Source: Macrostomum lignano
Lineage: Eukaryota
NCBI GenBank assembly: GCA_002269645.1
Contig: NIVC01000152.1
Span: forward strand, 1 to 64,000
DNA length: 64,000 nt
Reading direction: 5' to 3'
Of this stretch, positions 5,309-62,047 are shown piece by piece (the stretch's first letter is position 1; each line of letters begins with the position of its first letter). The notes under the pieces are model-generated. The model saw nothing but the letters and a program-made list of their open reading frames with translations, made no database searches and was not told the origin of the DNA. A program made the position numbers and the translations under genes.

Positions 5309-7266
<1,958 letters not shown>

Positions 7267-7514: not shown

Positions 7515-16723
<9,209 letters not shown>

Positions 16724-38573: not shown

Positions 38574-39669
38574 ATTGAAGATTCGCAACTTCCAGCTTCA
38601 TCTAACATACATGCGCAACACCCTGATTTACACCGGCCGTGCGACTTACTTTTGATAAAAATAGCGACTTGCTTATCAAAGTTACCCTAAAGCAAAATTA
38701 ATATAATTAATTTTTTTTGGTAAACGGCAGGAGTAACTATCACAGTATCACGAGGGTAAATGCCTCGTCATCTAATTAGTTGCAAGTCTATTTTTGGGTG
38801 GGCGTTTTTGCGACTTACCTTGGCCGGGTCGGCCGGGTGTTGCGCATGTATATTCATCTAATGTCATTAACTATCCATTGATCTCGTCTCTACAGTCGGA
38901 AATATTACTAATTCATATGCACCATGAATATATTATAATTACTGATGTGTCATCACTTTTGATTGGTTAAACTTATCAGTGATAATTTGCCTGATTAGTG
39001 CAGATCCCGATTAAAAATTAAATTGCCTATTAAAAATTTATGACAAATTATCGTTGCTTTTCAAACGCTCACTGTATAATGATTTGCTTATCATTATAGT
39101 AGGTATTAAGCTATATTTATATAGATGTACTTTATCTAATCTTTGCTATAAGGATTTTGTTGTGTAATCTGTATTCTCGGCTTTCATTCATTTGGACCCA
39201 GTTTGCTTTCCTGACCAAATCTAATGGCTTCTCATATGAACAGGCTGTTCTCTCAGGTTCTTAACATTACCCTTCGGAATGGGCACGGGTCATTGTGTGG
39301 TGTCTGCTTAACGTTTGTGATTTGTAAGCCCCCCTCTTATCCAGTATGGTAACAAGAGTAACACGTTATTATCATTCACGGATTTGTACTTCTAATGATT
39401 GAACGAATGACAATTATATTCTAATTCAAGCTTACATTGCTACTGTACTAGTAGCTTAGTGATTTTTTTCTGTGTACTGAATAGTTGTCGAAACACTGCT
39501 CGACTATTACTGTTTAAATGCGATTTTTAATTAATATATAAAATGCGTATTGTTTATTGTAAATCGATTTTATCAAGCCTATCCGTCACACTATATCGCT
39601 TCTATTATTATTTTCTTATTTATTTTTCAGCATGTAGTTTCTTCACTTGTTAACAAGAGATAAATCACT

Positions 39670-40570
39670 CTTGACCAAAGTCACACTCCTGACCAAAGTC
39701 ACTCCTGACCAAAGTCACTCCTGACCCAATTCACTTCTGACCAAATTCACGTCTGACCAAAGTCACTCCTGACCTAAGTCACACTCCTGACCTAAGTCAC
39801 TCCTGACCTAAGTCAAACTCCTGACCTAAGTCAAACTCCTGACCCAAGTCACTTTGACCCAAGTCACCGTCCTGACCAAAGTCAAAGTCACTCCTGACGA
39901 AAGTCACTCCTGACCAAAGTCACTCGTGACCCAATTCACTTCTGACCAAAATCACTCCTGACCAAAATCACCCAGACCGAAATCATCACAGACCGAAATC
40001 ACCACTGACCGAAATCATCACTGACCGAAATCATCACTGACCGAAATCATCACTGACCGAAATCATCACTGACCGAAATCATCACTGACTGAAATCATCA
40101 CTGACCGAAATCATCATTGACCGAAATCACCATTAACCGAAATCATCACTGACCGGAATCATCACTGACTGAAATCATCACTGACCGAAATCATCATTGA
40201 CCGAAATCATCACAGACCGAAATCATCACTGACCGAAATCATCACTGACCGAAATCATCACTGACTGAAATCATCACTGACCGAAATCATCATTGACCGA
40301 AATCACCATTAACCGAAGTCACCACTGACCGGAATCATCACTGACTGAAATCATCACTGACCGAAATCATCATTGACCGAAATCATCACTGACCGAAATC
40401 ATCATTGACCGAAATCATCACTGACCGAAATCATCACTGACCGAAATAATCACTGACCGAAATCATCATTGACCGAAATCATCACTGACCGAAATCATCA
40501 CTGACCGAAATCATCACTGACCAAAATAATCATTGACCGAAATCATCACTGACCGAAAATCACTCCTGAC
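39670..40570. repeat. ~16-bp minisatellite upstream of FBXO8 (CTGACCAAAGTCACTC grading into CTGACCGAAATCATCA)
   Basis: Direct reading. Confidence 0.95.
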
Positions 40571-40649
40571 TCTCACTTTCATAGTAATGTCTCCCTACAA
40601 AAGCAGATAGAAGCCATGTCAAATAACAATGATTTCAGCCACAGACTAC

Positions 40650-43297
40650 ATGGGCCAGATACTAACCAGGCGCCAGTACGAAGACCTGCTGATTGACGGC
40701 TTGGCAGTCGCGGCAGTCAGCAAGGCAGCAGTCGAACAGATCCGACCGATCCCGAGCTCTGGCCCGATTTCGCGACCTATCGGAATTGCCGCCGGAACTG
40801 GCACTGGCTATTCTGAGTCACCTGGGCCCTACGGATCTGTGCCTGGCCGCCTGCGTCTGGGGCCATTTGGCTAATGACGAGCTGCTGTGGCAGGCCCTGT
40901 GCAAAAATGCCTGGGCCTATTGTACAGCTTATAGCGTGCCGGGCCGCTCCTACCGGCAGCTCTATCTGCGATTGGATGAAGCTTCACTCAGCTTCAATGC
41001 CGACTGCTTCGATGGTTTTGCCTGCTTTCTTAGGCACGAAATTCTTATTGACGAGCCGGGAGAATTGGCCCTGTTCTTTCACGGCGCTCGGGTGCTGGAT
41101 AGGCGCCAGGTTAGCCGCTTCATGGAGACTCGGTGAGACGCTGCTGCTTGGCTGGGCTATGCTGTACTGACTCACTCGCTGGGGTGTTCTGAGAGAAACT
41201 TGGGAATTGTGAAGCTTAGGATTCTGGGGGAAATTTAGGGATTCTGAAGCTTGGGTGTTCTGAAAGAAATTTGGGAATTGTGAAGCTTAGGATTCCGAGG
41301 GAAATTTAGGGATTCTGAAGCTTGGGTATTCTGAGAGAAACTTGGGGATTGTGAAGCTTGGGGGTCCTGAGAGAAACTTGGGAATTGTGAAGCTTAGGAT
41401 TCTGAGGGAAATTTAGGGATTGTGAAGCTTGGGGGTTCTGAGAGAAACGGGGATTGTAAAGCTTAGGATTCTGGGGTAAATTTAGGGATTCTGAAGCTTG
41501 AGTGTTCTGAGAGAAACTTGGGGATTCTGAAGCTTAGGATTCTGGGGGAAATTAGGGGATTCTGAAGCTTAGGGGTTCTGAGAGAAACTTGGGGATTCTG
41601 AAGCTTAGGATTCTGGGGGAAATTAGGGGATTCTGAAGCTTAGGGGTTCTGAGACAAATTTGGGGATTCTGAAGCTTGGGGGTTCTGATGGAACTTTAGA
41701 GATTCTGAAGCTTGAGGATTGTAGGGGAAATTTGAGGATTGTAGGGGAAATTTGAGGATTGTAGGGGAAATTTGAGGATTGTAGGGGAAATTTGAGGAAT
41801 GCAGGGGAAATTCAAGGATTGTAGGGGACATTTGAGGAATGCAGGGGAAATTCAAGGATTGTAGGGGAAATTTGAGGATTGTAGGGGAAATTTGAGGATG
41901 GGGTGAAGCTGGATGATTGTGACCTTTGTTATTACCTAAAGTACATTATCGATTCCCGCCCACTCAGGCCCGACGTTCTAGACAAACTGATGGAACGGAA
42001 AAGCTTCGAAAACCAGTTTTTGCCGAATGCGCTTCGTAAATTTTTCAACGAAGTGGAGGCGCCAAACGCTAGAAACGAATACTTGAGCCTGCTGCTGGAC
42101 CGGTTCAGCCTGCGCTTTGTGGCCTCCAACCCTGGCACTGGACTGAGCAAAGGTTTGTCCAGTCTGCTAGTCTGGTAGAGTAAGAGTGGAGTCTGGTGGA
42201 GTAGGTGTAGAGTCTGGTAGAGTAAGAGTGGAGTCTGGTAGAGTAGGTGTAGAGTCTGGTAGAGTAAGAGTGGAGTCTGGTAGAGTAAGAGTGGAGTCTG
42301 GTAGAGTAAGAGTGGAGTCTGGTAGAGTAGGTGTAGAGTCTGGTAGAGTAAGTGTAGAGTCTAGTATAGTAGATGTGGAGTCTGGTGGAGTAGGTGTAGA
42401 GTCTGGTAGAGTAGGTGTAGAGTCTGGTAGAGTAGGTGTAGAATCTGGTAGAGTAGGTGTGGAGTCTGGTAAAGTAGGTGTAGAGTCTGGTATAGTAGAT
42501 GTGGAGTCTGGTGGAGTAGGTGTAGAGTCTGGTGGAGTAGGTGTAGAGTCTGGTAGAGTAGGTGTAGAGTCTGGTATAGTAGATGTGGAGTCTGGTGGAG
42601 TAGGTGTAGAGTCTGGTAGAGTAGGTGTAGAGTCTGGTAGAGTAGGTGTAGAGTCTGGTATAGTAGATGTGGAGTCTGGTGGAGTAGGTGTAGAGTCTGG
42701 TAGAGTAGGTGTAGAATCTGGTAGAGTATGTGTAGAGTCTGGTAGAGTATGTGTAGAGTCTGGTAGAGTAGGTGTAGAGTCTGGTAGAGTAGGTGTAGAG
42801 TCTGGTATAGTAGATGTGGAGTCTGGTGGAGTAGGTGTAGAGTCTGGTAGAGTAGATGTGGAGTCTGGTAGAGTAAGAGTGGAGTCTGGTCGAGTAGGTG
42901 TAGAGTCTGGTAGAGTAGATGTGGAGTCTGGTGGAGTAGGTGTAGAATCTGGTAGAGGTATGGAGTCCGCGGTAGAGTACATGTAGATGTTGCCAATATT
43001 GCCAATTTGTCAGTAAAAATTGTGGGCCATGGTTTTAAATCCAATTCATCCGCGTTTAAAACTGCTGAATTCGCACAAAAATGCCCCGCAGAGATGGTGT
43101 TCATCCTGTGCTACTCGCTCATACTACTGTCAGTAGACCTGTGCAGTCCGCACGTGAAAAATAAAATGTCTAAACGAGAATTCATTCGCAATACGAGGCG
43201 AGCCACAACCCCAATTAGTGACGACTTTCTAGGTCATCTGTACGATAACATCTACCTGGTTGGACACGTGGCGCCAACCACAGCTTGCAGCTATTAG
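40650..43297 (+). CDS. FBXO8: F-box only protein 8 (F-box + Sec7 domain)
   Basis: Exons ~40650-41132, 41968-42152, 43092-43297. LSELPPELALAILSHL..DLCLAACVW..LANDELLWQALCK, FENQFLPNALRKFF, CYSLILLSVDLCSPHVKNKMSKREFIRNTRRA..FLGHLYDNIYLVGHVA all match FBXO8. The MGQ start is out of frame with the F-box (see findings). Confidence 0.93.
41180..41900. repeat. Composite minisatellite in FBXO8 intron 1 (GAAGCTT/GGGATT subunits, then 20-bp GAGGATTGTAGGGGAAATTT)
   Basis: Direct reading. Confidence 0.9.
42165..42985. repeat. 21-bp minisatellite (GAGTCTGGTAGAGTAGGTGTA) in FBXO8 intron 2
   Basis: Direct reading; source of the PDST/VESG repeat ORFs. Confidence 0.97.
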
Positions 43298-43464
43298 CTG
43301 TGGCGTGATATTGAAGTCTAGGAAACTTCTATTTAAGTCTGTGTTGTTTTGCTAGAGATATCACACCATATGTGGCTTCTTGGGGGGGGGGGTGCTTGCA
43401 GTTCTATAGTTTGTTAGCTATTATAAATTTTCTTAAAATAACACTTCCAGTCTCAAATATTGCG

Positions 43465-43950
43465 TCAGTTCACTCGGCTCCCTGTCAGTCAGAATCCCTC
43501 AGTTCACTCTGCTCCCCATCAATCAGTCAGAATCCCTCAGTTCACTCTGCTCCCCATCAATCAGTCAGAATCCCTTAGTTCACTCTGCTCCCCATCAATC
43601 AGAATCCCTCAGTTCACTCTGCTCCCCATCAGTCAGAATCCCTCAGTTCACTCTGCTCCCCATCAGTCAGAATTCCTCAGTTCACTCTGCTCCCCATCAG
43701 TCAGAATCCCTCAGTTCACTCTGCTCCCCATCAGTCAGAATTCCTCAGTTCACTCAGCTCCCCATCAGTCAGTCAGAATCCCTTAGTTCACTCTGCTCCC
43801 CATCAGTCAGAATTCCTCAGTTCACTCTGCTCCCCATCAGTCAGAATTCCTCAGTTCACTCTGCTCCCCATCAGTCAGTCAGAATCCCTTAGTTCACTCT
43901 GCTCCCCATCAGTCAGTCAGAGTCCCTCAGTTCACTCTGCTCCCCATCAA
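43465..43950. repeat. ~31-39 bp minisatellite (TCAGAATCCCTCAGTTCACTCTGCTCCCCATCAG)
   Basis: Direct reading. Confidence 0.93.
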
Positions 43951-44369
43951 TAATAGCTACTTTACTAATTCTGTGGGATAACTGCTGTTACCCTGGACTT
44001 ACGTACCATACGCTCGTACAGTACATGTACGAGTATGTAAATATAATGCGGTTACATATTTTAATATGTAGTGTGCATGATAAAGATTGCACTTTTCATC
44101 CGTTCTGTACATAGGTATTTAATTTGGGCGAATCAGTTCGTTGAGTTCGCCTTTGTCCTTGCAGTAACTATTGAGAATGGATGGAGTTACTGAGAGCTCT
44201 TTTTGATTGGCTTCGCTGATTTCTGCTCAAACTTGTTGGCATCTATTTTAGTGTGCGGTTCTTCTGTAACCTCTGATGTTATCAAAGATTTTTCAGACAG
44301 TGTTTAAGGTAGACTTTGATATTGGCGTTATCTTTTCTTCTCTTTGCATGTTTTGGACAGCTTGGATAG

Positions 44370-45875
44370 GGATCTGACATTGAATGGGGGATTCTAGTTA
44401 AATATAGGATCTGGGTAGAAATCTGACATTGAATGGGGGGGTTCTAGTTAAATATAGGATCTGGGTAGAAATCTGACATTGAATGGGGGATTCTAGTTAA
44501 ATATAGGATCTGGGTAGAAATCTGACATTGAATGGGGGGGGTTCTAGTTAAATATAGGATCTGGGTAGAAATCTGACATTGAATGGGGGATTCTAGTTAA
44601 ATATAGGATCTGGGTAGAAATCTGACATTGAATGGGGGGTTCTAGTTAAATATAGGATCTGGGTAGAAATCTGACATTGAATGGGGGGTTCTAGTTAAAT
44701 ATAGGATCTGGGTAGAAATCTGACATTGAATGGGGGATTCTAGTTAAATATAGGATCTGGGTAGGAATCTGACATTGAATGGGGGGGGGTTCTAGTTAAA
44801 TATAGGATCTGGGTAGAAATCTGACATTGAATGGGGGGGTTCTAGTTAAATATAGGATCTGGGTAGAAATCTGACATTGAATGGGGGGTTCTAGTTAAAT
44901 ATAGGATCTGGGTAGAAATCTGACATTGAATGGGGGATTCTAGTTAAATATAGGATCTGGGTAGAAATCTGACATTGAATGGGGGGGGTTCTAGTTAAAT
45001 ATAGGATCTGGGTAGAAATCTGACATTGAATGGGGGGGGTTCTAGTTAAATATAGGATCTGGGTAGAAATCTGACATTGAATGGGGGGTTCTAGTTAAAT
45101 ATAGGATCTGGGTAGAAATCTGACATTGAATGGGGGATTCTAGTTAAATATAGGATCTGGGTAGGAATCTGACATTGAATGGGGGGGTTCTAGTTAAATA
45201 TAGGATCTGGGTAGAAATCTGACATTGAATGGGGGGGTTCTAGTTAAATATAGGATCTGGGTAGAAATCTGACATTGAATGGGGGGTTCTAGTTAAATAT
45301 AGGATCTGGGTAGAAATCTGACATTGAATGGGGGGGGAGTTCTAGTTAAATATAGGATCTGGGTAGGGATCTGACATTGAATGAGGGTTCTAGTTAAATA
45401 TAGGATCTGGGTAGGAATCTGACATTGAATGGGGGGGTTCTAGTTAAATATAGGATCTGGGTAGAAATCTGACATTGAATGGGGGGGGGGGGTTCTAGTT
45501 AAATATAGGATCTGGGTAGGGATCTGACATTGAATGAGGGTTCTAGTTAAATATAGGATCTGGGTAGAAATCTGACATTGAATGGGGGTTCTAGTTAAAT
45601 ATAGGATCTGGGTAGAAATCTGACATTGAATGGGGGGGGGTTCTAGTTAAATATAGGATCTGGGTAGGGATCTGACATTGAATGAGGGTTCTAGTTAAAT
45701 ATAGGATCTGGGTAGGGATCTGACATTGAATGAGGGTTCTAGCTAAATATAGGATCTGGGTAGAAATCTGACATTGAATGGGGGGGGGGGGTTCTAGTTA
45801 AATATAGGATCTGGGTAGAAATCTGACATTGAATGGGGGGGGTTCTAGTTAAATATAGGATCTGGATAGGGATGT
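44370..45875. repeat. ~49-55 bp satellite with a variable poly-G tract, ~29 copies
   Basis: ATCTGACATTGAAT(G)nTTCTAGTTAAATATAGGATCTGGGTAGAA. Confidence 0.97.
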
Positions 45876-46534
45876 GATATTTATTAGTATTTAATTATAT
45901 AAATATTTTCGTAAGGAATGTTTTTTGAGATTAGAATTTGCATCATGGATAGAAAATAGCGCTTGTTAGCCCTAATGATATTATTTAAAAAATTGCGTTA
46001 ATTATTTTACAGACCTGTTTTCTTAGATCGATAAATGATAACCTTGTAACTATGCTAAATTGCCTATATGCTTGTACCTTAAAGATAAATGTTCTGTAAC
46101 TGCTTTATTTTTCTACACAGAATCTACAGTTAGTAATTAATGTTACTCATGTATATTCAGACTTTCTGCATGCAGGTTTGGAATGAAAATACACTACAGT
46201 AGTATTTCTTATGCACAGACCTAAATTAGGTTAAATTATATATAGATTTTGTCACCCTGTGCGCGCGTTAATCATTGGGTGTTTACTACTGAAGTTATTT
46301 TTGTAAATTTTCTTTTACAAACAATCTTGAAATGCTGTACCAGCAAGATATTTAAAGTGGGTTAACACCAGCAAGATTCTTATGTTGGCCGACTTTGTGA
46401 AGCAAAGATTAGCCTTGTTAATCCGGCTGCAGACTGCAGCTTGCTGCATCCATTCGATAGTAAGTCTAATTAATACAAATTGCAAGTTTATTTAGTCCAT
46501 TAATAATTGATTAACATGAAACTGCTCAGGAGAG

Positions 46535-46970
46535 TCAGTTAGTCTACAGTAGTCTACAGTAAGCCTACAGTTAGTCTACAGTTACTCTACAATTAGTCTA
46601 CAGTATAAGCCTACAGTTAGTCTACAGTAAGCCTACAGTTAGTCTTCAGTTAGTCTACAGTAAGTCTACAGTTAGTCTACAGTAAGCCTACAGTTAGTCT
46701 ACAGTAAGCCTACAGTTAGTCTTCAGTTAGTCTACAGTAAGCCTACAGTTAGTCTACAGTTAGTCTACAGTAAGCCTACAGTTAGTCTACAGTAAGCCTA
46801 CAGTTAGTCTTCAGTTAGTCTACAGTAAGCCTACAGTTAGTCTACAGTAAGCCTACAGTTAGTCTTCAGTTAGTCTACAGTAAGCCTACAGTTAGTCTAC
46901 AGTTAGTCTACAGTAAGCCTACAGTTAGTCTTCAGTTAGTCTACAGTAAGCCTACAGTCAGTCTACAGCA
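46535..46970. repeat. 11-bp minisatellite (AGTCTACAGTT/AGCCTACAGTT)
   Basis: Direct reading. Confidence 0.95.
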
Positions 46971-48134: not shown

Positions 48135-49319
48135 CTTTAACATGACGTGTTGACTGGGTGCTGACTAGACCTGATAAACTTCAGGAGGAAGTTAGCTGTT
48201 ATACTTTAGGTTTACTTAATGGACTTCAATATACTCTGGATTGTGCTGGCTGAAATCCTAATTTAATTTGCTTTTAAAGTACTAGTGTATATAAAAAATA
48301 TTTTCTGTACAGTGTAATTGTAACTCTATCTGAGAATGCGCAGATTGTATAGAGCATAAGTTTACTTTAATATCTTTCATTCTGTTTTTTGCTTTACTGT
48401 GGAGTTAGTTATCTAAAGATGAGTAAATATGATTGGTACAGGGTCCCGCGCGCCAAGATTCGAACCCGGGATCCACGAGTTCTGAGTGCTACAACTTAAT
48501 ATGTAGCTTGTAGGCCTGATCATTTTCATGGCAGACAAAAAGTTATGCAAGCTAAAAGATTGCCTACTACGAGTAACAAGTAGCGACATTTTTTGTGAGG
48601 CCTGTCTGTTCTACGGTCCTTTATAGCGTTTTAGGGTATTGCATGAAATCCGTATTGGTGAGCACCACAAATTTTGCTCCATAGAAGTATTTAGATTTTC
48701 TTTTAAGCAACAAATGAATTAGCAAATCAGTCTAAATTTGTTTCGGTAATGATACGAGCTCAACTCGGAGCAAACTTAGTTGAAAAAAAGATGTTTATTT
48801 AAATTATTTTGTCAAGTTAATGCACTTATATTATTAACTATGATCCTAATGAAGGTACAAACTCGGGTTTAAAATTATTAGAGAAAAAAACATTGATAAA
48901 CAGTCTCTGTTAGTATTGGCGTATATATGAATAGTAATTTTCTAATGGGAAACTACGAGTAGCAAGGCCTAGCTAATATTAGAATAACAGAGCAGGTCGA
49001 CAAGAAAAACTAAAAGTATAAAAGTGAAGCTTTTAAATCTAAATATGTCAGGCAGAATTGAAGATGGGCTGAGTGGAGAACTTTATGAATTCCAAAGATT
49101 CACGTCCACGATATTTTGTCTGCAGTCTGCATTTCAGAGCTGGTTGTAAGAGCAGTTGTAAGAGTTGCTTGTATCGTCCCGTGGTCATCCCCAATTGACA
49201 AGGGAACAGTGACAATGCATCAAAATATCTAATTGTCCAACCCAACTGCAAGCCCATAAAAACCACCGAATACCGCTCACCCCACCTACTGCCTGGCTTC
49301 GGAAAATTCAATAAATATT

Positions 49320-49590
49320 CAGCAGAATCAAGCTGCATCTTAAACAAAAAAAGCAACAGCAACAGTGACGGGAAAATAAATAAATAAATAGTCAGCAGAA
49401 TCAAACTGCAAGCTTAAGCGGAGAGCACAACAGCAACAGTGACGGGAAATTAAATAAATAAATAGTCAGCAGAATCAAACTGCAAGCTTAAGCGGAGAGC
49501 ACAACAGCAACAGTGACGGGAAATTAAATAAATAAATAGTCAGCAGAATCAAACTGCAAGCTTAAGCGGAGAGCACAACAGCAACAACGT
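49320..49590. repeat. 74-bp tandem repeat, ~3.5 copies, downstream of the VLIG stop
   Basis: CAGCAGAATCAAACTGCAAGCTTAAGCGGAGAGCACAACAGCAACAGTGACGGGAAATTAAATAAATAAATAGT. Confidence 0.9.
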
Positions 49591-49809: not shown

Positions 49810-52800
49810 TCACATAATCAGACAACCACCACTGGATTCTTCTTTGAATCCGTCCTCGGTCTTCTTGATTTTTTCCCACGACTCTGGCACTTCCACTCTC
49901 TTGCCGTAGTGTTTGCTCAGCGATTCCTTGTGGTTTCTTACAAACCACCGCCATAGCAGACTGGATTCATCACCAGGAGGAGAACAGGGAGGATACCAGT
50001 GTGGAAAACATTCGCTAAGATCCTCCATTTTGTGACTCTCCTGCCGGAAGGTAAAAGTGTTCAGTTCACCACAGGTTGCCACTGACAGGTTCCCGGATTT
50101 TGGATCTGTAATTCCCGCAACGCCTGCTGGCCTGACGCTCCTACACCGTCGAGCGTTTTTATCGTACTTGTACCAGAACCATAAAAGGTATCCGCTCGTC
50201 CACACTTGACGTGTCGATGTTGGTTCTCCACACAACGGACAGTCCTGAAGGTCATTCCAATCTTTGTCGAGCAGTGAGACATGCGGCGCTTTGCCATCCC
50301 ACCTCAGTTGCTCTGGTGACGTCGGTGGATTGTGAATAAAATCCGTGACGTTTTTAAGATATTTAAGTAGTCTCTTATTGAATTTTTGCAAGTCGCTAAT
50401 CGAGTATTGGCTTGCAACTTTGAAGTCTTCCACGTGCAGACCAATCATATCACCCTGTTCGCAGAATCTTTCTATCCAAAACTGTAGCAGGTTGGTGCAA
50501 CTGTCGTGGCCACTCATCTGTTGATTAGCCATTTCACTCGCGCGGTTTTTAAGTGGCTCAAGAAGATTGTGCACCCTCTCGTTGAGAACTTTTGTGTACT
50601 TGCTGTTGCCTTCTGGGTCTGGCTTAAAAAATTGTTCTTCCATCGTTTGTACCAGCCACTTGCGTGTGAAGGCTTTACTATCTTTGATGAATTCGATCCA
50701 ATCGTCGAATTCATTTGTGTCAATCAGACTTTTCGTCACCTGCTTCACAAGATCCTCATTGCTCTCGTTTTTTTTATCCAAAAAATCTTTACTGACAAAG
50801 TTGGCAGCTTGTCGCAATGCAGTTTCGCTGACGAAGTTCCTGATGATGCCTGCGATTACACTGGCACTGCGCACATCCTGGCCCTCTCGCTTGCAGCAGT
50901 TCCTGAACTCTTCAAAGACAGTATTCTTGAATGCTTGCAGCTGAGCTCTGACCCCAAACTGCTGCTCAAATTGCTCATGTGCCGTCTTAAATTCTGCGGC
51001 TGCATAAAAGCAAGCGTAAACGCTGAAAAAATCTTTCAACTGTGGTTTTAGTGTGACCCACCGATATCCACGAGTACTTACAAGGTGCTCCTTCGATTGA
51101 TCGCTGTTGAACTCATCAATCTCTTTATCCACAAAATGTATTATTGATGAAAAGACGCCACGATCGATAATATCCATACCATTGTCTCTTTGCAACTGTA
51201 TGATTTCTTTTTCAACTTTTTTCAGAACCGAGTTGGAAAAATTGAACACCTGTGTCTTGCACTTTTCCTCGGATGGCCAGAACTTGACAGCCATATGCCA
51301 CTTTGCATCGTATTGATCATTCCCGATCAGATCGACCCTCAATGGCACACATGTTTGTGTAACTGTCATTAATTTATTGATCTCATTTTGAATATTAGAT
51401 CTTCTACTCTCAAACTCTGAGAGCAAAGCCTTCTCGGCGAGCTCAAAAAAGTTTATCGTCTGCATCGGTTTCATAGGGACTTCCTTCATCTGCTTTTCCC
51501 ACATGGTATCAAATTCTTTTCTCAGCTCGTCATCGGTAATCTGAGAGCGATTTTCAGCCACCATCTTTTCTGCCACTTGGCGCGCTTTATCCATAAACTC
51601 CTGCTTTAGCTGATCCGCTTCGCCTCTGCTCTGCAGAAGTACTCGCCTCTCCTCCTTCACCTCCGTCAGTCTCTCGTTACACTCGCGAGTAAGTGATTTG
51701 ACATCTTCCTCAAAGTTGTTAAAAGTTCTTTGTTGCCATTGAACGATTGTCTGGCTTTCTTCGTGTTTCTTGAAAAACGATTCGATTTCCTTTTGCTTCT
51801 CAGACTGATTTTCCTTGATGAATTTATTCGTTTCGGCGATCTCCGTTTTTAGCCTCTCACGCAGGCTCTGGGCATCTTGACAAGAACGCAAATTTGGGGC
51901 CGCCGTCTCTTTCACTTGCTCCCATGCTTTTTTCTCGAGATCGCGCCTAAGTTCAGAATACTTCTTGTTGACTTCTTTGTAGGCACTGAGCTCGAGTGTG
52001 TTTTGGAAACTAAATACAAAATCTTCCTTGACAACTGCTTTCCAGAAGTCAGCCGCACGAACATAAAACTCTTTGAACGTCAACTTGGAACTGTACATAC
52101 CCTTCAGGCACTGTACAATCTTGTACTTTGTACCCTGAACTCCTCTGCTGTAACCTGGATTGACAGGAGCTAACGGAGGTTCTCCCTCCCACAGGTTTGT
52201 TAGGAAAATTACGTTTTCGTTCACATCAAACTTAAGGAGATCAGCGAAGCGCTTTAAATTTGTCACTCCTTCCTCATTCGCTGCACCCTCAACTGTACTG
52301 TCCAGAGTCCGCAACAGACGATCTCTCGCTTCCTGCATTTTCTCACGTGAGTCAACAGCACAGACGTTCTGATGCACAAATAGGCAAGCCTTACCCTTGA
52401 TGAGGTTCGGTGATGCATTAGAAATTCTTAGGAAAGCGTATACAACAATTTGCAAGACGTTTGTCATCTCGTGTATATTTTCACCCATAATATTAATAAT
52501 TGTAACGTCAGCCAGTCCTACGGCCATGGTCGCGAGTTCATTGTCGCGATGTTTTCCGTCATTGCCCAGTTCGGTAGAGCGTAGGCCTTCAGTATCGATG
52601 ATCATAATGAAATCCGCATTCAGACCTGATTTTGTCCGATCATTTCGCACCATCTGAAGAAAGGCACCTCTGGTGCAGCGTCCGGCACTTACTGGCAGCT
52701 GCAAGCCGAACATCGTGTTCAGTAAAGTTGACTTTCCCGAGCTCTGAATACCTAGAACTGACACAATCAAGAGCGACTCCTTCTTAAATTTTTCCTGCAG

Positions 52801-54582
52801 CTTTTTCAGCACTCCTTCAATCCATTTAATCGTGATGGCACTAGCATCTCCGTCAATCAGCTCGAAAGGGTGGCCTTGCACAATAAGCTGAACAGCTAAG
52901 TCTAATAGTTCAGTATGACAGCTAAGTCCAGTAGGAATCCAAAGTTGTTCGGCCACACGTTCGTTGTTTAAAGTGGCTTCGTACAACTGTGATAACTCGC
53001 GAAAGATATGCTCCACGCCTAAAACTGAGGCTTGTAAATCAGCGGGTGCAACCGAATTGGACTTTTGAATTCTAGTGTTCTCGCCATCTAGAAATAGTTT
53101 TAGGCTTCTTAGAAAGATGCTGATTTGTCCGTTATCGGAGGCTTCCTTGAATAATTTTATGAAGCGGAGTATAAAGTCCCTTGAATTTCCCTTCTTAAGA
53201 AACTCAATCTGCTGTCGCCGCAGTTCCTTTATCTTCAAGTTGTCATTCTCTTCCTGCTTCACTCTTTCGTTCCCAGTCAATTTCTGGGCATCTCTGACTC
53301 TGTCCTTCTGCAGCTTCGAGATTTCGTGCCAAGGCTGACCGTGTAGAGGCAGTAGTGTTTTTTTACGATCAGTGGCATCAAAGCGAACGGCAGTATCTAC
53401 CAGTTCTTTCGCATTCGAAATAACCTGTTGCACGGCAGGCTGCCTCTCATCCACAAGCATATTGTAACTGTTTTCTGCTATCTCGCCAAGATTAGTCAAA
53501 GTCATGGACTTCTTGCTTTCGATCATCTTTATGTGAAGCCTTTTCTTTACGTCTGTCAAGAGTTCCGATGATGTTTTTCGATCCGCTTCCTTCACAATGC
53601 GTACCTTCTCTTTAAAGGTGTCTCCAAAATGGGATCGCAGTTGTCGCAGAAAGTCAGGAACTTTTGTTGAGGAGATCACCAAAATGATGTCCTGATTGTG
53701 GTGGAAAACTTTTTTAAGGAAGTCACCAATTTCACCCTGCTTGTCGGCGTCATCTGATAGAGAAACTATAATGCAGGTAGACACATCAGCAAGGAACCGC
53801 ATCTGTTGCTGACACTTCACTGCGTCTCCTCGAAGGTTGAGAACGCACACGGGCTCGTTCAGCTTTAAATCGGCGTCGTTAAGACTCGGTAGCATCCACG
53901 TCTGCTCGATACTTCCATCGCTGAAAATTCTCTCCCCCAACGATGTAGATGACTCTCTAAACACCATCTGCTTGTCGTGAACGCATCTGTTGATGAGCTG
54001 CGACTTTGAAACTGCATTGTTACCTAATCTGATCACAGAAAGAACACTAAACGAGTCTGAATTGATACACTTTTGCTTAGAAACTTTGTCTTGACCACGG
54101 TATTTTAGCTCACCCGTCCTCAGTGGCAGCGTGAAGAGTTGCGATACATAACCTCCGAACCAGGAAAGTGGTACTGCGAGTTTACAATCAAAAAGTTTCT
54201 CAGCCAGCACCTGTTTGAGCGGGGCATCGCAGCAAAGATAACAGGCCAAGAAAACGTCCTGGTGCTGCAGAAGGGCCATCGAATGCGTGCATTCTGTGTT
54301 AGAGTCTGACCAGTCATCATCTTCGTCTTCGTTGGTTGGAGCTGCAGATGATGCAAGGTTACTCAGCAGACTACCGAACAGCTGGTAGTTATTCATGACC
54401 ACTGACTTCAGCATGAGCATGGGAACGTCGGAAATACTTTGAGCAACTGCTTCCTCGCTTTCGTCTCTCAAAGTCATGACATCACTCAAAGATATTTTTT
54501 CAGGAAACTTATCGGAAAGCTGTAAAGTCTCCAGAAATTGTCTCTGCTTTTCTGTCAGAGATTTTAGAGTCACCGAGTTCAT
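49810..54582 (-). CDS. GVIN1: Very large GTPase, VLIG/GVIN1/URGCP family, intronless, 1590 aa, C-terminal CaaX
   Basis: G1 VLGIQSSGKSTLLNTMFGL, G2 AGRCTRGAF, G3 IIDTEGL, DNELAT..GLADVTIINIMGE, family motifs FELIDGD and DFVFSFQNTLE, C-terminal CPLC..RPAGVAG..W domain; ends SSGGCLIM*. Confidence 0.93.
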   Translation of the reverse strand: MNSVTLKSLTEKQRQFLETLQLSDKFPEKISLSDVMTLRDESEEAVAQSISDVPMLMLKSVVMNNYQLFGSLLSNLASSAAPTNEDEDDDWSDSNTECTHSMALLQHQDVFLACYLCCDAPLKQVLAEKLFDCKLAVPLSWFGGYVSQLFTLPLRTGELKYRGQDKVSKQKCINSDSFSVLSVIRLGNNAVSKSQLINRCVHDKQMVFRESSTSLGERIFSDGSIEQTWMLPSLNDADLKLNEPVCVLNLRGDAVKCQQQMRFLADVSTCIIVSLSDDADKQGEIGDFLKKVFHHNQDIILVISSTKVPDFLRQLRSHFGDTFKEKVRIVKEADRKTSSELLTDVKKRLHIKMIESKKSMTLTNLGEIAENSYNMLVDERQPAVQQVISNAKELVDTAVRFDATDRKKTLLPLHGQPWHEISKLQKDRVRDAQKLTGNERVKQEENDNLKIKELRRQQIEFLKKGNSRDFILRFIKLFKEASDNGQISIFLRSLKLFLDGENTRIQKSNSVAPADLQASVLGVEHIFRELSQLYEATLNNERVAEQLWIPTGLSCHTELLDLAVQLIVQGHPFELIDGDASAITIKWIEGVLKKLQEKFKKESLLIVSVLGIQSSGKSTLLNTMFGLQLPVSAGRCTRGAFLQMVRNDRTKSGLNADFIMIIDTEGLRSTELGNDGKHRDNELATMAVGLADVTIINIMGENIHEMTNVLQIVVYAFLRISNASPNLIKGKACLFVHQNVCAVDSREKMQEARDRLLRTLDSTVEGAANEEGVTNLKRFADLLKFDVNENVIFLTNLWEGEPPLAPVNPGYSRGVQGTKYKIVQCLKGMYSSKLTFKEFYVRAADFWKAVVKEDFVFSFQNTLELSAYKEVNKKYSELRRDLEKKAWEQVKETAAPNLRSCQDAQSLRERLKTEIAETNKFIKENQSEKQKEIESFFKKHEESQTIVQWQQRTFNNFEEDVKSLTRECNERLTEVKEERRVLLQSRGEADQLKQEFMDKARQVAEKMVAENRSQITDDELRKEFDTMWEKQMKEVPMKPMQTINFFELAEKALLSEFESRRSNIQNEINKLMTVTQTCVPLRVDLIGNDQYDAKWHMAVKFWPSEEKCKTQVFNFSNSVLKKVEKEIIQLQRDNGMDIIDRGVFSSIIHFVDKEIDEFNSDQSKEHLVSTRGYRWVTLKPQLKDFFSVYACFYAAAEFKTAHEQFEQQFGVRAQLQAFKNTVFEEFRNCCKREGQDVRSASVIAGIIRNFVSETALRQAANFVSKDFLDKKNESNEDLVKQVTKSLIDTNEFDDWIEFIKDSKAFTRKWLVQTMEEQFFKPDPEGNSKYTKVLNERVHNLLEPLKNRASEMANQQMSGHDSCTNLLQFWIERFCEQGDMIGLHVEDFKVASQYSISDLQKFNKRLLKYLKNVTDFIHNPPTSPEQLRWDGKAPHVSLLDKDWNDLQDCPLCGEPTSTRQVWTSGYLLWFWYKYDKNARRCRSVRPAGVAGITDPKSGNLSVATCGELNTFTFRQESHKMEDLSECFPHWYPPCSPPGDESSLLWRWFVRNHKESLSKHYGKRVEVPESWEKIKKTEDGFKEESSGGCLIM

Positions 54583-55039
54583 TTTTTTGCTTTGAGCATG
54601 TGCCCGGTTCTGGACACCTGCGTATGCTGCGTGAAGTCGTCACTCTCCGTATTCCGTTCAACCAGTCGCTTAGATTCTGATGTCGCAGAATAGCGCGAAT
54701 AAAAAAGACAAGTCTATTTGGTCTCAACTTAAAGAGCGCACCAACGAATTTTAAAGTTGTATATATAGGCGAGTTTTTATGCCCCGCGGCGTGGGGTGTG
54801 ATCACCATCCACACGTTTAATGGGTGTACACAGAGGTATTGTATGAGTGTTATTAAAAGTCGCATAAAAGCGAAGTTCTCTTTTTTGAAGCAAAGCACAG
54901 CTTTCATTAGTTCTTGCCAGCGAAAGAACACTACGACGTAGTCAACAACACGTGGCACGCGGCAGCGACTAGCTAGCACTTAGGGTGGGGGGGGGGCGGG
55001 AGTCCCGAGAGAGACCCACCCAACACGGCGACAAACAAA

Positions 55040-57654: not shown

Positions 57655-59847
57655 GTAAGCGTCACGAGCACGATACAGCCAAAGTAGCTCGTAGCAAATA
57701 TCGTAGTTCAGTTATTCATGAAAACATTAAAAGCTGGTCTGACAGCAAGTAATCCATTGCGATTTTCTGTTCATTAATTTGCATTTTACTTACCGACAAG
57801 TTTTACTTGATTTTCTATCCTCTACTTGCTAGTTACAAATTATAGTTACAAAAATGACTGAAAGCGCTGAAAGGCATGAACAAGGTTTGCTGCTCCTTAC
57901 ATTGCTGGTGCAAAACGAAATCGATAAAAACCAGATATGACACAAAATGAATGAGACTTTCATGAAGGAGACGAGTTGGGCAGCTGGGCAGCAAAATACG
58001 TTGGATGCGCGTTTGTTCCCGCCGGTAGGCTACTTACAGCGTTAGCAGCAGCACCTCCTGTGTGAGAAGTACGACTCGGAACCCGATGATGTTAGCTCGT
58101 AGATGCTTTCTAACACCTCGAAGCTGCTGCTGCTGCAAAGACAACAATATTTGAGGGTTGGTTTAGGGGCGGCTTATCTGGGTCAGGTTGAGTAGCTCCA
58201 GCTGTGGCCTTTTGACTACATGTAAAAAGCAGTAGCGTTTTGTGCGCGACTCATCTCTCATCTCATCTCTTCTCTCTCCTTTCCTCACTCAATCTGGCCC
58301 GCAGCCATGAGCTGGATTCTTTTCCAGGCACTTCAAGTAAAAGAGTTTTCCGCACCCTACTCAAAGAGGATTGCCTAAAGTTTGAAGTCAACATTGAAAG
58401 GCCGGTAGGTAACTCTACTAAGCATTAAATGCCAGGGTACTATGCTTGTATAAGCTACTGTCTTAACTCTCATGTTTGCTTAACTCTTTACCAAAATCTA
58501 ACGCTTCATATGCTCTCCTGTGCAATCATTATTCCGCGTACATAATAGGCCTTATTGATCTGCATGGCTTGGACGCAGCTGTGCCTATAGTAGGGCAATA
58601 GAGTGAGAGCCAGACAGGGACGGAGAGAAGGGGAGCTGACTTGACTCCCTCCAGACTTCCCAGTCGCCCTCGAAGACATTCTGTCGCCGCTTCCCTCATG
58701 TAGCCGCGTGGGCAGCTGCCATCATTATTCCTCTCTCCCTCCTAAACCTCATGCACCGGCGTCCACTGTGGGGACCCCCAGGCCATCGGTTTTGCGTGTC
58801 AATTGGGTTGCTGGTTGGTCGGTCGCCGTGTGTTCCTGTCTAGCCTCCCCTCCTCCTCCCGGTGTTTCACTTCTGCCATGGCGTGGCGTCAGCGTGGGTG
58901 TCCGGCCAAGGACTTCTACAATAAAGCATCTGGAAAGAAGAGTTTTATAACAAGACTCAACCCCCGAAAGCAGAGATTTGGACCAATTATTCAATAGTAG
59001 TTTGAGGAAGAGCCGGAATGCAGCTTATTCAACTATCAAGGTTTAACTCTCCCAAGTTATACTGCTTTTAAGACTTTCCTTTCCAGACTGTCTAACATTA
59101 GAACTCCATGGCTCGGCCATTGAAAGCTCGCTTAATATTGACTGCGCCTCCGCCAGTTGAGCGCCTCTTTTCTTGGCTCAGGAAAATCGTGTTGGAGGAA
59201 AGAGAAGAGAGAGGGGAGGACAGAGACGGCGTGTGCAGGCCCGTGTCCGCCTGTGCACCTCCATGCCGCTCCCGTCCCGCAGACAAGGACAAGCTAGGTC
59301 GGCTTCCTTTCAGGGCCTCCATTAAAAATTGCACCTTTGTCTGACTGCTCGTCTTCCCACTCTGTTCCCTTCGCATTTCTGTCCCCATTCTGTTGCAGTC
59401 AATTCTGTACTTCAGAGCACGGTTTTCGGCCTGAGTGTGCGTTATTAAGGCCATGAGATCGTGAGGCAGAGCTTGATTGGCAATTGCAATTTAAGTCATT
59501 GTGGCATCATAGGACGCTTCAGCATGCGTACAGATCGGTGTACACTGATAGGATAGAGCGATCGTGTCACCGTCAGTTCTAGAAAACAGAAGCAATCAGC
59601 GAATTAGCTCGTAAAACAGATTCATCTATTTGACGGATTTAACTCAATATGCCACCTTTTAGCGTGAATCATCCAGTGCAATTTTGATACAAAAGCTACT
59701 GAACAGCTAGCTACCCATCAACCCTCTGTGCGAACTGCAGTCAGAGAGCAACGTTCGGGAAGAATCTCCAGCGAAGAGAACTCAAATCGGGAAGAATCTT
59801 CCAAGTGCTATAACATAATATATCGATTCTGGAGCGAGACATTCGAA

Positions 59848-62047
59848 ATGTCACTCATGGAATCTCCAGGCCAGCGGATGCCGAACGGTCACTGCACTGA
59901 CGCAGTCCCGGACGAAGCTGCAGTGGCAGCTACGAGCTTCGAACAGCTGCAGCTCGAGAATCGACAGCTGCGCGCCCAGCTGGACGACCTGACCGACGCC
60001 TGGGAGGGCGTCCGGGCGGAGGTCAACGACGAGTGCGCAGCCAGGGAGCGACTGCAGGCCGGCCTGATGGCGGCTCGAGCCGAGCTGGAGGCGGAGCGGC
60101 GCGGACGTCTGGCGGCCGAAGCGCAGTTGCAGAAAGACGCTTCTGAGGCGGCCGCGCTCAAAGAGAGATGCGAGCGGGCGCTGCGAGAGAGAGCCGAGCT
60201 GCGCACAGGGACGGCCGAGCTAAAGGCCAGGCTTGAAGCTGCTGTCAGGTGGAATTTTATATTAGCTAGTTCTCATCTGATGCTTACTCTGAGCCGAGAC
60301 TTTGGTGTTGAAAATGTGATTTGGTGTCTACTGATCTATGCTCCAGTGTTTGCTGGTATCTGTAATCGGAGCATCTCAGAAGTGGACGCGTCTGATTCTC
60401 GACCCCCTGGTTCTATTCCGTTCGCACACTCATCGAAAAACTGACCGGGGGTTTTCCGTCCGTGTCACACCCATGAGGGTCAACCCGAAAGCACAGAGTG
60501 TACATTCCTGACTTAGAAAGTCAGTGCCGCTGTACGAGCTACACCCCGTGTGAGAGTACGAGTGTGTGCCTGTGTACAGTACGAGTACCCAAACAGACAC
60601 TTTTAAACACTCGTATTTTGTCTGTTTGTTAATGCCGGCTTATATTATCGCCAGTAGTTCCGCAGGTTAAGGATTGCTCAAATACATTTACAATGGGTCT
60701 GAACCAACTAAACATTGTTTTGAGCTGTCTTTAACCCGCAAAGAGAGTAGCGGCAATGCAAACCGACCTTTAATACGACGTATTTGACAGTATATCTCCT
60801 GTCTATTTACCATAAGCTATGTTAGTGTTCGGCCAAAGTTCCTAACCTCGCCACTTTCTCAGAGATTTGGAGGCGTCTCGAGCTGAGATTGCAAGCCTTT
60901 CTGAGCGTCTGCAGGCTGCTCAAAGACGGCCTGACGAGGAAGCCATTGAAACTGGAAGACTGCTGGAACAGCAACCGAAAGAATGTCAGTGTTCAACGAA
61001 GATAGCAAAACCCATGATCAAACGATCAGCAGATGAAATTTCCAAGTCAGACCATCCAAACAGTCGGTCCAGTCAGCGCGATAGAAACTCATCGATTAGG
61101 CGATCGATTTTAGCAGCTGACACCGGCAGCAGCAGTACTTTCAAACCCAAACTAACAGATGACGGAGTCCTAAGCGGTGGTAGTGCCATAATAGTTCGGC
61201 TGCACAGGTTGGAACGAGAAAACTCGGCGCTTAGACGGCAACTGGGCATCCCTGAGGACTCTGATCTCCCTGCTAATGTGTTCTATGGTAAATAATTTAG
61301 AGAGTTTAATAATTATCATTACAACCTCACTCTCTGCCCCAGCACCCCAACTTTAACAGCCACCTCACTCCCTGTCCCAGCACCCCAACTTTAACAGCCA
61401 CCTCACTCTCTGTCCCAGCACCCCAACTTTAACAGCCACCTCACTCCCTGTCCCAGCACCCCAACTTTAACAGCCACCTCACTCCCTGTCCCAGAACCCC
61501 AACTTTAACAGCCACCTCACTCCCTGTCCCAGAACCCCAACTTTAACAGCCACCTCACTCCCTGTCCCAGCACCCCAACTTTAACAGCCACCTCACTCCC
61601 TGTCCCAGCACCCCAGCTTTAACAGCCACCTCACTCTCTGTCTCAGCACCCCAACTTTACCAGCCACCTCACTCCCTGTCTCAGAACCCCAACTTTAACA
61701 GCCACCTCACTCCCTGCTCAAGCACTTTTAACAGTGCTGACTTTAACAGCCTGCCACTCCAACACCTACTTATGTGCTACCATAGTAACTATAGAACTTG
61801 CTTTTTTCAGCCCATGCTGCTATAGTTCAACAACATGTACATGTAGAAGTCAATTTTTGGACACATTTAACTTTACTCAACAGGCCGAAGTGGCAGTCCC
61901 GGCCGGTCGTCGAAAATGAATAGTACTTCAACCGCCCATTCAACGTCCTTGCAAAGTAGAAATCATGGGCGCCTGGACGTTGCACAGTGGACGGCGAGAC
62001 ACGAGCAGCTAAAGCGCTTGCTGGAACAGCGTCTTGGCAATGCTTGA
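59848..62047 (+). CDS. Uncharacterised coiled-coil protein (3 exons)
   Basis: Exons 59848-60248, 60863-61287, 61884-62047 with matching phases: heptad-rich LQLENRQLRAQLDDL..AELKARLEAAVR|DLEASRAEIASLSERLQ..LERENSALRRQLG..|GRSGSP..WTARHEQLKRLLEQRLGNA*. Start codon uncertain; exon 2 could instead end at the stop at 61295. Confidence 0.72.
60372..60560 (+). mobile_element. tRNA-derived SINE (family 2), near full-length, in coiled-coil gene intron 1
   Basis: B-box-like GGTTCTATTCCGTTCGC, body CCATGAGGGTCAACCCGAAAGCACAGAGTGTAC, hairpin CTGACTTAGAAAGTCAG, tail CCGCTGTAC. Confidence 0.65.
61325..61720. repeat. 38-bp minisatellite, ~10 copies, intronic
   Basis: CACTCCCTGTCCCAGCACCCCAACTTTAACAGCCACCT. 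Confidence 0.95.

What the first reader, a model, noticed from the sequence alone, without database searches (positions are those of the whole stretch)
49810..54582. Invertebrate very large GTPase (VLIG/GVIN1) ending in a CaaX prenylation box
Seen: an intact, intronless 1590-aa ORF with all VLIG GTPase motifs, ending ...EESSGG-CLIM-stop, after a flexible acidic/Gly-Ser linker. Known: CaaX with X=Met is a farnesyltransferase substrate; some vertebrate GBPs (GBP1/2/5) use CaaX to reach pathogen membranes, and I do not know this as a general VLIG feature. Inference: a membrane-targeted giant immune GTPase that acquired GBP-like lipid anchoring independently. The C-terminal Cys/His cluster keeps CPLC, but the His residues I would expect downstream appear replaced by an aromatic stretch (SGYLLWFWYKY).
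Basis: partly seen in the sequence, partly recalled or inferred. Interest (0 to 1): 0.75.

Follow-up and report, generated by a model that had tools for sequence, protein, structure and literature searches.

The report
Flatworm giant GTPase with lipid-anchor tail
An intact gene of the flatworm Macrostomum lignano encodes a giant VLIG-family GTPase ending in a lipid-attachment signal (CLIM); this signal is kept in its sister gene family but is almost absent from other VLIGs, so it looks like a separate origin of the membrane anchor that vertebrate GBP immune GTPases use.

Summary
Window 49810-54582 (minus strand) is one uninterrupted 1590-codon ORF. It has strong URGCP and URGCP_GTPase Pfam hits and intact G1 and G3 motifs, and it ends ...EESSGG-CLIM-stop. 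The window is Macrostomum lignano contig NIVC01000152.1.

M. lignano VLIGs form one clade, (D,(C,(A,B))). Subfamily A is this gene plus a 97%-identical copy. Its sister subfamily B has three loci at about 39% identity. All five loci end in a CaaX box: CLIM in A and CNIL in B. The linker before the box has diverged and changed length. Subfamilies C and D have no CaaX box.

Among about 125 representative VLIGs with a complete C-terminus, only one other lineage has a canonical box (CIIL). CLIM is the human PEX19 box, which is fully farnesylated in reporter assays. No paper in the library links VLIGs to prenylation.

The zinc-type Cys/His cluster is degenerate. An aromatic stretch sits in its place and is the most membrane-interface-prone 11-residue segment in the whole family sample.

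Caveats:
- Prenylation, membrane targeting and an immune role are all inferred.
- The public gene model stops at residue 1046 because of a 32-nt non-canonical gap, probably an annotation artefact.
- The sister copy carries two premature stops.

Verdict: a new variant of a known kind, of moderate interest.

The parts
49810..54582 (-). Complete intronless ORF of 1590 codons plus TGA stop (stop at 49810-49812). This is VLIG/URGCP-family GTPase subfamily A of Macrostomum lignano.
   Evidence: organism and contig
53401..54267 (-). URGCP domain (residues 106-394)
   Evidence: Pfam PF25496, E=1.6e-55
52147..53283 (-). URGCP-like (VLIG-type) GTPase domain (residues 434-812)
   Evidence: Pfam PF25683, E=3.2e-101
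52726..52752 (-). G1 / P-loop, GIQSSGKST (residues 611-619)
   Evidence: matches the family consensus
52585..52596 (-). G3 motif, DTEG (residues 663-666)
51425..51456 (-). 32-nt segment (ATAAAC...GGCTTT, not GT-AG) that the public gene model skips. Skipping it creates the artificial ending ...MQT-ALRV* at residue 1046.
   Evidence: comparable 10- and 12-nt gaps in a paralogue's model; annotation method
50221..50241 (-). CPLCGEP, the remnant of the family's CPFCGxxC zinc-type knuckle. The third Cys and the downstream His residues are lost.
   Evidence: alignments; canonical form seen in L008 and P0070
50164..50196 (-). Aromatic stretch SGYLLWFWYKY (residues 1463-1473), in place of the His-containing part of the cluster. 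It is a candidate membrane-interface loop (inference).
   Evidence: WTSGYLLWFWY scores -9.4 on the Wimley-White scale, the lowest 11-residue score in this protein and in all 157 family proteins
49825..49866 (-). Flexible linker KKTEDGFKEESSGG (residues 1573-1586), not conserved in subfamily B
   Evidence: The AlphaFold2 model gives pLDDT below 50 for the last 8 residues
49813..49824 (-). CaaX box C1587-L-I-M1590, a predicted farnesylation site
   Evidence: CLIM fully farnesylated in reporter assays (PMC11152559)
49740..49745 (-). AATAAA, a likely polyadenylation signal about 65 nt after the stop
54761..54767 (-). TATA-like element about 180 nt upstream of the ATG (consensus match only)

Best explanation
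This is a functional, intronless, cytosolic VLIG/URGCP-family GTPase gene of the flatworm Macrostomum lignano. It belongs to a short subfamily (A) that lacks the long N-terminal extension of its paralogues.

Proposed mechanism. Farnesyltransferase modifies Cys1587 in the C-terminal CLIM. The -LIM residues are then cleaved and the new C-terminus is carboxyl-methylated. The farnesyl group sits on a flexible acidic/Gly-Ser linker. There is no polybasic or palmitoyl second signal, so the anchor should be weak and reversible. GTP-driven self-assembly of the G domain, as in GBPs and dynamins, would turn this weak anchor into stable coating of a membrane. The target is most plausibly a pathogen or a pathogen-containing compartment.

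The CaaX box arose once, in the common ancestor of M. lignano subfamilies A and B. This happened after the ancestral zinc-type Cys/His knuckle had begun to decay. The box has been kept in both lineages, as CLIM (farnesyl type) in A and CNIL (geranylgeranyl type) in B.

Shown: the ORF, family membership, the motifs, the conservation pattern, the rarity of CaaX in the family, and that the CLIM tetrapeptide is a good farnesyltransferase substrate. Inferred: prenylation in vivo, membrane binding, oligomerisation and an immune role.
For: - The ORF and domains are intact.
- Overall dN/dS against the 97%-identical copy is 0.44. It is 0.09 in the URGCP domain and 0.22 in the GTPase domain, and the last 41 residues are unchanged.
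- All five genomic loci of subfamilies A and B end with Cys at -4, Ile at -2 and a stop exactly three codons after the Cys. This holds although the linkers differ in sequence and length and the proteins are only 39% identical.
- The NJ tree (928 columns, 200 bootstraps) supports M. lignano monophyly at 100% and A+B at 99.5%. Subfamilies C and D lack CaaX.
- Among 125 family sequences with a complete C-terminal domain, canonical CaaX occurs only in M. lignano A/B and in P0070 (CIIL). The Cys frequency in these tails is 1.1%.
- CLIM is the human PEX19 box. It is fully farnesylated by human and yeast farnesyltransferase and is cleavable by RCE1 or ZMPSTE24 (PMC11152559). CNIL is the box of human GBP2 (PMC11846989).
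- There is no signal peptide or transmembrane segment, and the tail is unstructured in the AlphaFold2 model.
- The M. lignano annotation is entirely transcript-derived, so the locus is transcribed (PMC5730564).
Against: - There is no direct evidence of prenylation, localisation or induction by infection.
- The only public gene model ends at residue 1046, before CLIM.
- The sister copy L003 has two in-frame premature stops, and other M. lignano VLIG loci carry frameshifts. The family is therefore turning over, and this copy could be recently disabled at the level of expression.
- dN/dS in the last 290 codons is about 1 (16 non-synonymous against 4 synonymous changes, small numbers).
- Human GVIN1 works with a C-terminal HA tag, so it needs no CaaX. 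Lipid anchoring is thus not intrinsic to VLIG function.
- No orthologues from other flatworm species could be retrieved.
Confidence: 0.6

Rival explanations
1. The locus is a decaying or silent duplicate, or it makes only truncated transcripts. In that case the C-terminal 548 residues and the CLIM box are never produced from this copy, and the open frame persists only because the duplication is recent.
For: - The public model P0001 ends at residue 1046.
- The 97%-identical copy has stops at codons 559 and 677.
- Subfamily D and one subfamily-B locus carry frameshifts.
- The DV1 line has large recent duplications (PMC5730564).
- C-terminal dN/dS is about 1.
Against: - The window copy has 1590 codons open with no stop or frameshift, while its twin acquired two stops within 123 substitutions.
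- dN/dS is 0.09-0.22 in the N-terminal domains.
- The 32-nt gap is not GT-AG. It belongs with the 10- and 12-nt gaps in another model, which are too short to be introns. Those gaps come from BLAT mapping of de novo transcripts at 80% identity or more.
- Even if this copy were silent, the CaaX conservation across subfamilies A and B would stand.
Confidence: 0.15
2. The box is prenylated, but the lipid is not a membrane anchor. As in PEX19, which has the same CLIM box, the farnesyl folds back into the protein or mediates protein-protein contacts or assembly. Alternatively, the protein has a housekeeping, non-immune role.
For: - CLIM is identical to the PEX19 box, and PEX19 needs farnesylation to interact with its client proteins (PMC11152559).
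- There is no polybasic stretch and no nearby Cys to act as a second membrane signal.
- Flatworms have no interferon system, so the immune role rests on homology alone.
Against: - Subfamily B switched to the longer, more membrane-avid geranylgeranyl type. That fits selection for membrane affinity rather than for a specific farnesyl-binding pocket.
- The G domain is related to membrane-active GBP and dynamin-class GTPases.
- An exceptionally interface-prone aromatic loop lies about 120 residues upstream.
Confidence: 0.15
3. The terminal CLIM is a chance tetrapeptide with no modification and no function.
For: About 1-2% of eukaryotic proteins end in CaaX-like sequences (PMC11152559). Two other family members have non-canonical endings with Cys at -4: CTDA and CTAK.
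Against: - The Cys at -4, the Ile at -2 and the position of the stop are conserved in five loci of two subfamilies at 39% identity, while everything around them changed.
- Both boxes are textbook substrates.
- Cys frequency in family tails is only 1.1%.
Confidence: 0.07

Closest known systems
VLIG / GVIN1 / URGCP family (very large inducible GTPases; Pfam URGCP PF25496 and URGCP_GTPase PF25683)
   Same: Same domain order: URGCP domain, VLIG-type G domain with GxxxxGKS and DTEG, a long helical region, and a C-terminal domain with the conserved W-x-W-F and (I/V)P-x-x-W motifs. The gene is intronless and belongs to a lineage-specific multigene expansion.
   Different: - It ends in a CaaX box, which 122 of the 125 sampled complete C-termini outside M. 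lignano A/B and P0070 lack.
- The CPFCGxxC...H...H zinc-type cluster is degenerate and partly replaced by an aromatic stretch.
- It lacks the 740-1240-residue N-terminal extension of its M. lignano paralogues.
- Human GVIN1 functions with a C-terminal tag and needs interferon-induced cofactors.
Prenylated guanylate-binding proteins (human GBP1 CTIS, GBP2 CNIL, GBP5 CVLL)
   Same: A large GTPase of the dynamin/GBP class carrying a C-terminal CaaX box. The sister subfamily's box, CNIL, is letter-for-letter that of human GBP2. It is expected to work in the same way: a lipid plus nucleotide-driven oligomerisation gives a membrane coat.
   Different: It is not a GBP. The Pfam GBP domain is not hit at E<=0.01. 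The best PDB similarity, to the GBP1/GBP2 LG domains, is marginal at E about 0.009. The protein is about 2.7 times longer, and there is no Arg-rich patch before the box. The CaaX box arose inside a flatworm VLIG clade, so it is convergent.
PEX19 (farnesylated peroxisomal chaperone, CaaX = CLIM)
   Same: Identical tetrapeptide CLIM, proven to be farnesylated and cleaved by CaaX proteases in reporter systems.
   Different: There is no sequence or domain relationship. The resemblance is limited to the four terminal residues.
P0070, a VLIG from an unidentified invertebrate (ENA ERZ25069296 contig; groups with nemertean and sea-urchin VLIGs)
   Same: It is the only other VLIG lineage in the sample with a canonical CaaX box (…STRKCIIL).
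   Different: Its zinc-type cluster and canonical C-terminus are intact. The box sits on a roughly 40-residue appended tail with Arg-Lys next to the Cys. It lies in a different clade, so it is a separate acquisition.

Membership tests
VLIG / URGCP giant GTPases | URGCP domain (PF25496) N-terminal to the G domain | tested here: met
   E=1.6e-55, 189 bits against a cutoff of 27, residues 106-394
VLIG / URGCP giant GTPases | VLIG-type G domain (PF25683) with an intact P-loop and DxxG | tested here: met
   E=3.2e-101, 339 bits against a cutoff of 55, near full-length profile match; GIQSSGKST and DTEG present
VLIG / URGCP giant GTPases | C-terminal GVIN1_C-type domain with a CPFCGxxC...H...H cluster and W-x-W-F / P-x-x-W motifs | tested here: inconclusive
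   The W-R-W-F and VPESW motifs and the overall alignment are conserved. The 95%-identical copy has a weak precomputed PF26772 hit. The Cys/His cluster is degenerate. The local Pfam copy lacks PF26772.
VLIG / URGCP giant GTPases | Induction by interferon or infection | not testable with these tools
   No expression data could be reached, and no paper mentions these gene identifiers.
CaaX-prenylated proteins | Cys exactly four residues from the C-terminus, aliphatic a2, and an X residue that specifies the enzyme | tested here: met
   C-L-I-M followed by TGA. X=Met is the farnesyltransferase type. CLIM was fully modified by human farnesyltransferase in reporters.
CaaX-prenylated proteins | Cytosolic protein with an accessible, flexible C-terminus | tested here: met
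   No signal peptide or transmembrane segment (maximum 19-residue Kyte-Doolittle score 1.37). The linker is rich in Gly, Ser, Glu and Lys. The last 8 residues have pLDDT below 50 and no secondary structure, but the model is low-confidence overall.
CaaX-prenylated proteins | Covalent isoprenoid on the Cys in vivo | not testable with these tools
   Needs labelling or mass spectrometry.
Guanylate-binding proteins (GBP, PF02263) | GBP N-terminal LG domain and GBP C-terminal helical domain | tested here: not met
   No Pfam GBP hit at E<=0.01. There is only a marginal phmmer similarity to the GBP1/GBP2 LG domains (E about 0.009). It may work like a prenylated GBP but is not a member.

The most novel reading that the evidence does not exclude
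In this flatworm lineage the ancestral zinc knuckle of the VLIG C-terminal domain was converted into a membrane-interface aromatic loop (WTSGYLLWFWY). That loop and the farnesylated CLIM tail would together form a two-signal membrane anchor. This would make subfamily A a giant GTPase that coats lipid membranes directly, without the cofactors that human GVIN1 needs. Its sister subfamily would combine a geranylgeranyl anchor with an N-terminal perforin-like (MACPF) domain, that is, a lipid-anchored pore-former and GTPase in one protein.
Probability: 0.15. Interest if true: 0.75.

Novelty: new variant of a known kind. Interest (0 to 1): 0.5.

Why it matters
Of the four classes of large defence GTPases, VLIGs are the least understood. 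A mechanism has been reported only for human GVIN1, which coats a cytosolic bacterium, and how GVIN1 attaches to its target is still unknown. Here a VLIG clade has acquired the same lipidation signal that lets GBP1, GBP2 and GBP5 lead the way onto pathogen membranes. The clade has kept the signal, and it has diversified into farnesyl and geranylgeranyl types. That points to convergent evolution towards lipid-anchored GTPase coats. It also offers a simple experimental system: M. lignano can be made transgenic, and the C-to-S mutant is obvious. This system could test whether direct membrane anchoring is sufficient for VLIG function. The work also exposes systematic errors at the C-termini of the public M. 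lignano gene models, which hide this feature.

Tried and rejected
- **Frameshift as the origin of the aromatic stretch or the CLIM end.** Rejected. The region is in frame with subfamily C on both sides (TRQ / C-x3-RPAGVAGI), and the whole ORF is one frame.
- **The 32-nt gap in the public model as a real intron.** Rejected as unlikely. It is not GT-AG. The same annotation has 10- and 12-nt gaps that mis-translate a paralogue's CNIL tail as ...YATI. The annotation method explains such gaps.
- **CaaX as a general VLIG feature.** Rejected.
- **Independent gains in A and B.** Less parsimonious than a single gain, because A+B are sisters at 99.5% bootstrap.
- **Searches that returned nothing useful.** These were the word-indexed protein searches with the C-terminal alignment and with the P0070 tail, a metagenome contig scan, literature searches for the gene identifiers and for Macrostomum together with VLIG, and a sequence search of solved structures, which gave only marginal GBP hits.
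- **Structure prediction.** The AlphaFold2 model of the last 560 residues was too poor (mean pLDDT 53.6) for a fold search, so I ran none.
- **Remnants of the paralogues' N-terminal extension in the window.** None found.

Full report
**Observation**

Window 49810-54582 on the minus strand is a single ATG-to-TGA reading frame of 1590 codons ending ...KKTEDGFKEESSGGCLIM*. Pfam places a URGCP domain at residues 106-394 (E=1.6e-55) and a URGCP-like GTPase domain at 434-812 (E=3.2e-101). The P-loop GIQSSGKST, GRCTRG, DTEG and VHQNV all match the family consensus.

An in-frame stop lies 21 codons upstream of the ATG. A TATA-like element lies about 180 nt upstream, and an AATAAA about 65 nt after the stop. 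The ORF is the only VLIG copy in the window. It sits alone in DNA that is rich in satellite repeats.

**Origin and the public gene model**

The window is contig NIVC01000152.1 of the Macrostomum lignano assembly GCA_002269645.1, and window coordinates equal record coordinates.

The deposited protein (BOX15_Mlig020665g1, P0001) has only 1046 residues. It is identical to the ORF up to Thr1042 and then reads ALRV*. The model skips 32 nt (51425-51456; ATAAAC...GGCTTT, not GT-AG) and so shifts the frame.

I do not think this gap is an intron. In the same annotation, a paralogue's model contains gaps of 12 and 10 nt. The 10-nt gap turns a genomic ...NRSCNIL* into an annotated ...YATI*. The annotation was built by BLAT-mapping de novo transcripts at 80% identity or more onto a highly duplicated genome (PMC5730564). 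That procedure explains such micro-gaps. It also means that the locus is covered by transcripts. Whether full-length mRNA of this particular copy exists could not be checked here.

**Relatives and the distribution of CaaX**

An exhaustive HMMER search with residues 391-1590 found 1868 family members at E<=0.001. I tabulated the best 150 representatives. Using an HMM of the C-terminal domain, 125 sequences have a complete C-terminus. Canonical CaaX boxes occur only in three places:
- this protein and its near-copy P0007 (CLIM);
- the M. lignano paralogue P0002 (CNIL);
- P0070 (CIIL), a VLIG from an unidentified invertebrate that groups with nemertean and sea-urchin proteins.

Two further sequences have Cys at -4, ending CTDA and CTAK. 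These are not canonical boxes.

**The M. lignano family**

I fetched the loci of the M. lignano family and read their genomic C-termini directly.
- **Subfamily A** is the window gene plus L003. L003 is 97% identical in DNA, has only in-frame indels and carries two premature stops, at codons 559 and 677. Both copies end in GGCLIM*.
- **Subfamily B** (L002, L004, L009) ends in NRSCNIL* in all three loci. L002 and L004 carry uninterrupted ORFs of about 2370 codons.
- **Subfamily C** (L006, L007) ends in ...AASHL*.
- **Subfamily D** (L008) keeps the canonical cluster CPEQCSFCGEPC...H...H...HRP and ends in ...SLEHA*.

A neighbour-joining tree (928 columns, 200 bootstraps) makes the M. lignano proteins monophyletic (100%) with topology (D,(C,(A,B))). 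The A+B node has 99.5% support.

The most parsimonious history is one gain of CaaX in the A+B ancestor. A and B are only 39% identical. Their linkers before the box differ in sequence and length (KKTEDGFKEESSGG against SRHELQAEEPVNRS). Yet the Cys at -4, the Ile at -2 and the stop three codons after the Cys are retained in all five loci. That is the signature of selection on the box, not of chance. Cys frequency in family tails is 1.1%. P0070 keeps its zinc cluster and carries the box on an appended tail of about 40 residues. It is a second, independent acquisition.

**Is the box a plausible substrate?**

CLIM is the CaaX box of human PEX19. In a humanised yeast reporter system it was fully farnesylated by human and yeast farnesyltransferase, about 50% modified by human GGTase-I, and cleaved by RCE1 or ZMPSTE24 (PMC11152559). 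CIIL was fully geranylgeranylated in the same study. CNIL is the isoprenylation site of human GBP2 (PMC11846989).

The protein has no signal peptide and no transmembrane-like segment. Its tail is rich in Gly, Ser, Glu and Lys. In an AlphaFold2 model that is low-confidence overall, the last eight residues are unstructured. No polybasic patch and no second Cys lies near the box. A farnesyl alone would therefore give weak, reversible membrane affinity, as is known for GBP1.

**The Cys/His cluster**

The family's CPFCGxxC...H...H...HRP motif is reduced here to CPLCGEP...C...VRPAGVAG. This stretch is in frame with subfamily C on both sides. The decay is progressive along the tree: the cluster is intact in D, partly lost in C and degenerate in A and B.

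In A the gap is filled by WTSGYLLWFWY. On the Wimley-White interfacial scale this is the most membrane-prone 11-residue segment of this protein, at -9.4. It is also the most extreme in all 157 family proteins sampled, where the median protein minimum is -5.7. That it acts as a second membrane-binding element is a hypothesis only.

**Selection**

Against L003, dN/dS is 0.44 overall. By region it is 0.09 in URGCP, 0.22 in the G domain, 0.43 in the helical region and about 1 in the last 290 codons (16 non-synonymous against 4 synonymous changes). The last 41 residues show no change. dS is very uneven, at 0.016 against 0.112, which suggests a mosaic history or gene conversion. These numbers fit a constrained enzymatic core with a fast-evolving C-terminal part. 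They cannot be polarised between the intact copy and the copy that carries stops.

**Comparison with the known**

The protein is a member of the VLIG/URGCP family by its two defining domains. It is not a GBP: there is no Pfam GBP hit, and only marginal similarity to the GBP1/GBP2 LG domains in the PDB.

No paper in the searchable library connects VLIG, GVIN or 'very large GTPase' with CaaX or prenylation, other than by listing VLIGs beside GBPs. The study of human GVIN1 mentions no lipidation and used a functional C-terminally tagged protein. A prenylated VLIG clade is therefore a new variant of a known kind. It would work like a prenylated GBP but reached that state convergently.

**Verdict**

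Prenylation, membrane targeting and an immune role remain untested, and the transcript question is open. Interest is moderate at 0.5.

Noticed in passing
L003:7091-11875 (NIVC01001556.1, Mlig019691): A 97%-identical second copy of the gene. It keeps the frame and the CLIM end but has two premature stops: GAA>TAA at codon 559 and GGA>TGA at codon 677. It is annotated as two separate genes of 558 aa and 624 aa. It is probably a young pseudogene from the recent chromosome duplication in the DV1 line.
   Followed up: yes
window 51425-51456; L004:9716-9727 and 10028-10037: Public M. lignano gene models contain micro-gaps of 32, 12 and 10 nt with non-canonical ends. These gaps shift the frame and mis-annotate C-termini. 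The window protein is truncated to 1046 aa, and Mlig002090g1/g2 are annotated as ending YATI although the genome encodes CNIL.
   Followed up: yes
L002:10001-12300 (N-terminal 766 aa of Mlig012665g1): The long N-terminal extension of subfamily B, which the window gene lacks, has a weak sub-threshold MACPF/perforin hit (E=0.01, residues 232-380). If this is real, the protein would combine a perforin-like domain, a VLIG GTPase and a geranylgeranyl box.
   Followed up: partly
L005:1212-6536 and 13867-16536 (ENA ERZ25069296 contig): An unidentified invertebrate contig carries two tandem VLIG genes. The first ends ...STRKCIIL, an independent CaaX on an appended tail with an intact zinc cluster. The C-terminus of the second gene lies beyond the fetched DNA and was not seen.
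   Followed up: partly
window 35230-38429: A 3.2-kb satellite of a 21-nt unit (about 152 copies, 94% matches). It produces spurious ORFs of up to 1063 aa in several frames on both strands.
   Followed up: yes
window 5284-7276; 39665-46968; 49310-49586: A (TCTA) array of about 498 copies spans 2 kb. A dense block of different tandem arrays (units of 11-398 nt) lies just downstream of the gene region. A 74-nt repeat of 3.8 copies starts about 225 nt after the VLIG stop codon. The gene is an island in satellite-rich DNA.
   Followed up: no
window 49810-54582 compared with L003: Synonymous divergence between the two copies is very uneven: dS is about 0.016 in the URGCP and GTPase domains and 0.112 in codons 813-1300. 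This suggests gene conversion or a mosaic origin.
   Followed up: partly
L008:6001-13430 (Mlig024456): The most canonical M. lignano VLIG (intact CPxxCSFCGEPC..H..H cluster, no CaaX) has a frame change near 11772-11898 and an in-frame stop in the C-terminal part. Its annotated protein is therefore truncated at 1982 aa.
   Followed up: partly
window 59728-60444 (+): A 238-aa ORF with a sub-threshold match to the intermediate-filament rod (E=1.2e-4, 22 bits against a cutoff of 40). It is probably just coiled-coil-like sequence or an exon of a neighbouring gene.
   Followed up: no
window 41410-43297 (+): The public annotation places the end of a Sec7-domain gene here. The stretch overlaps 20-36-nt tandem arrays.
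   Followed up: no
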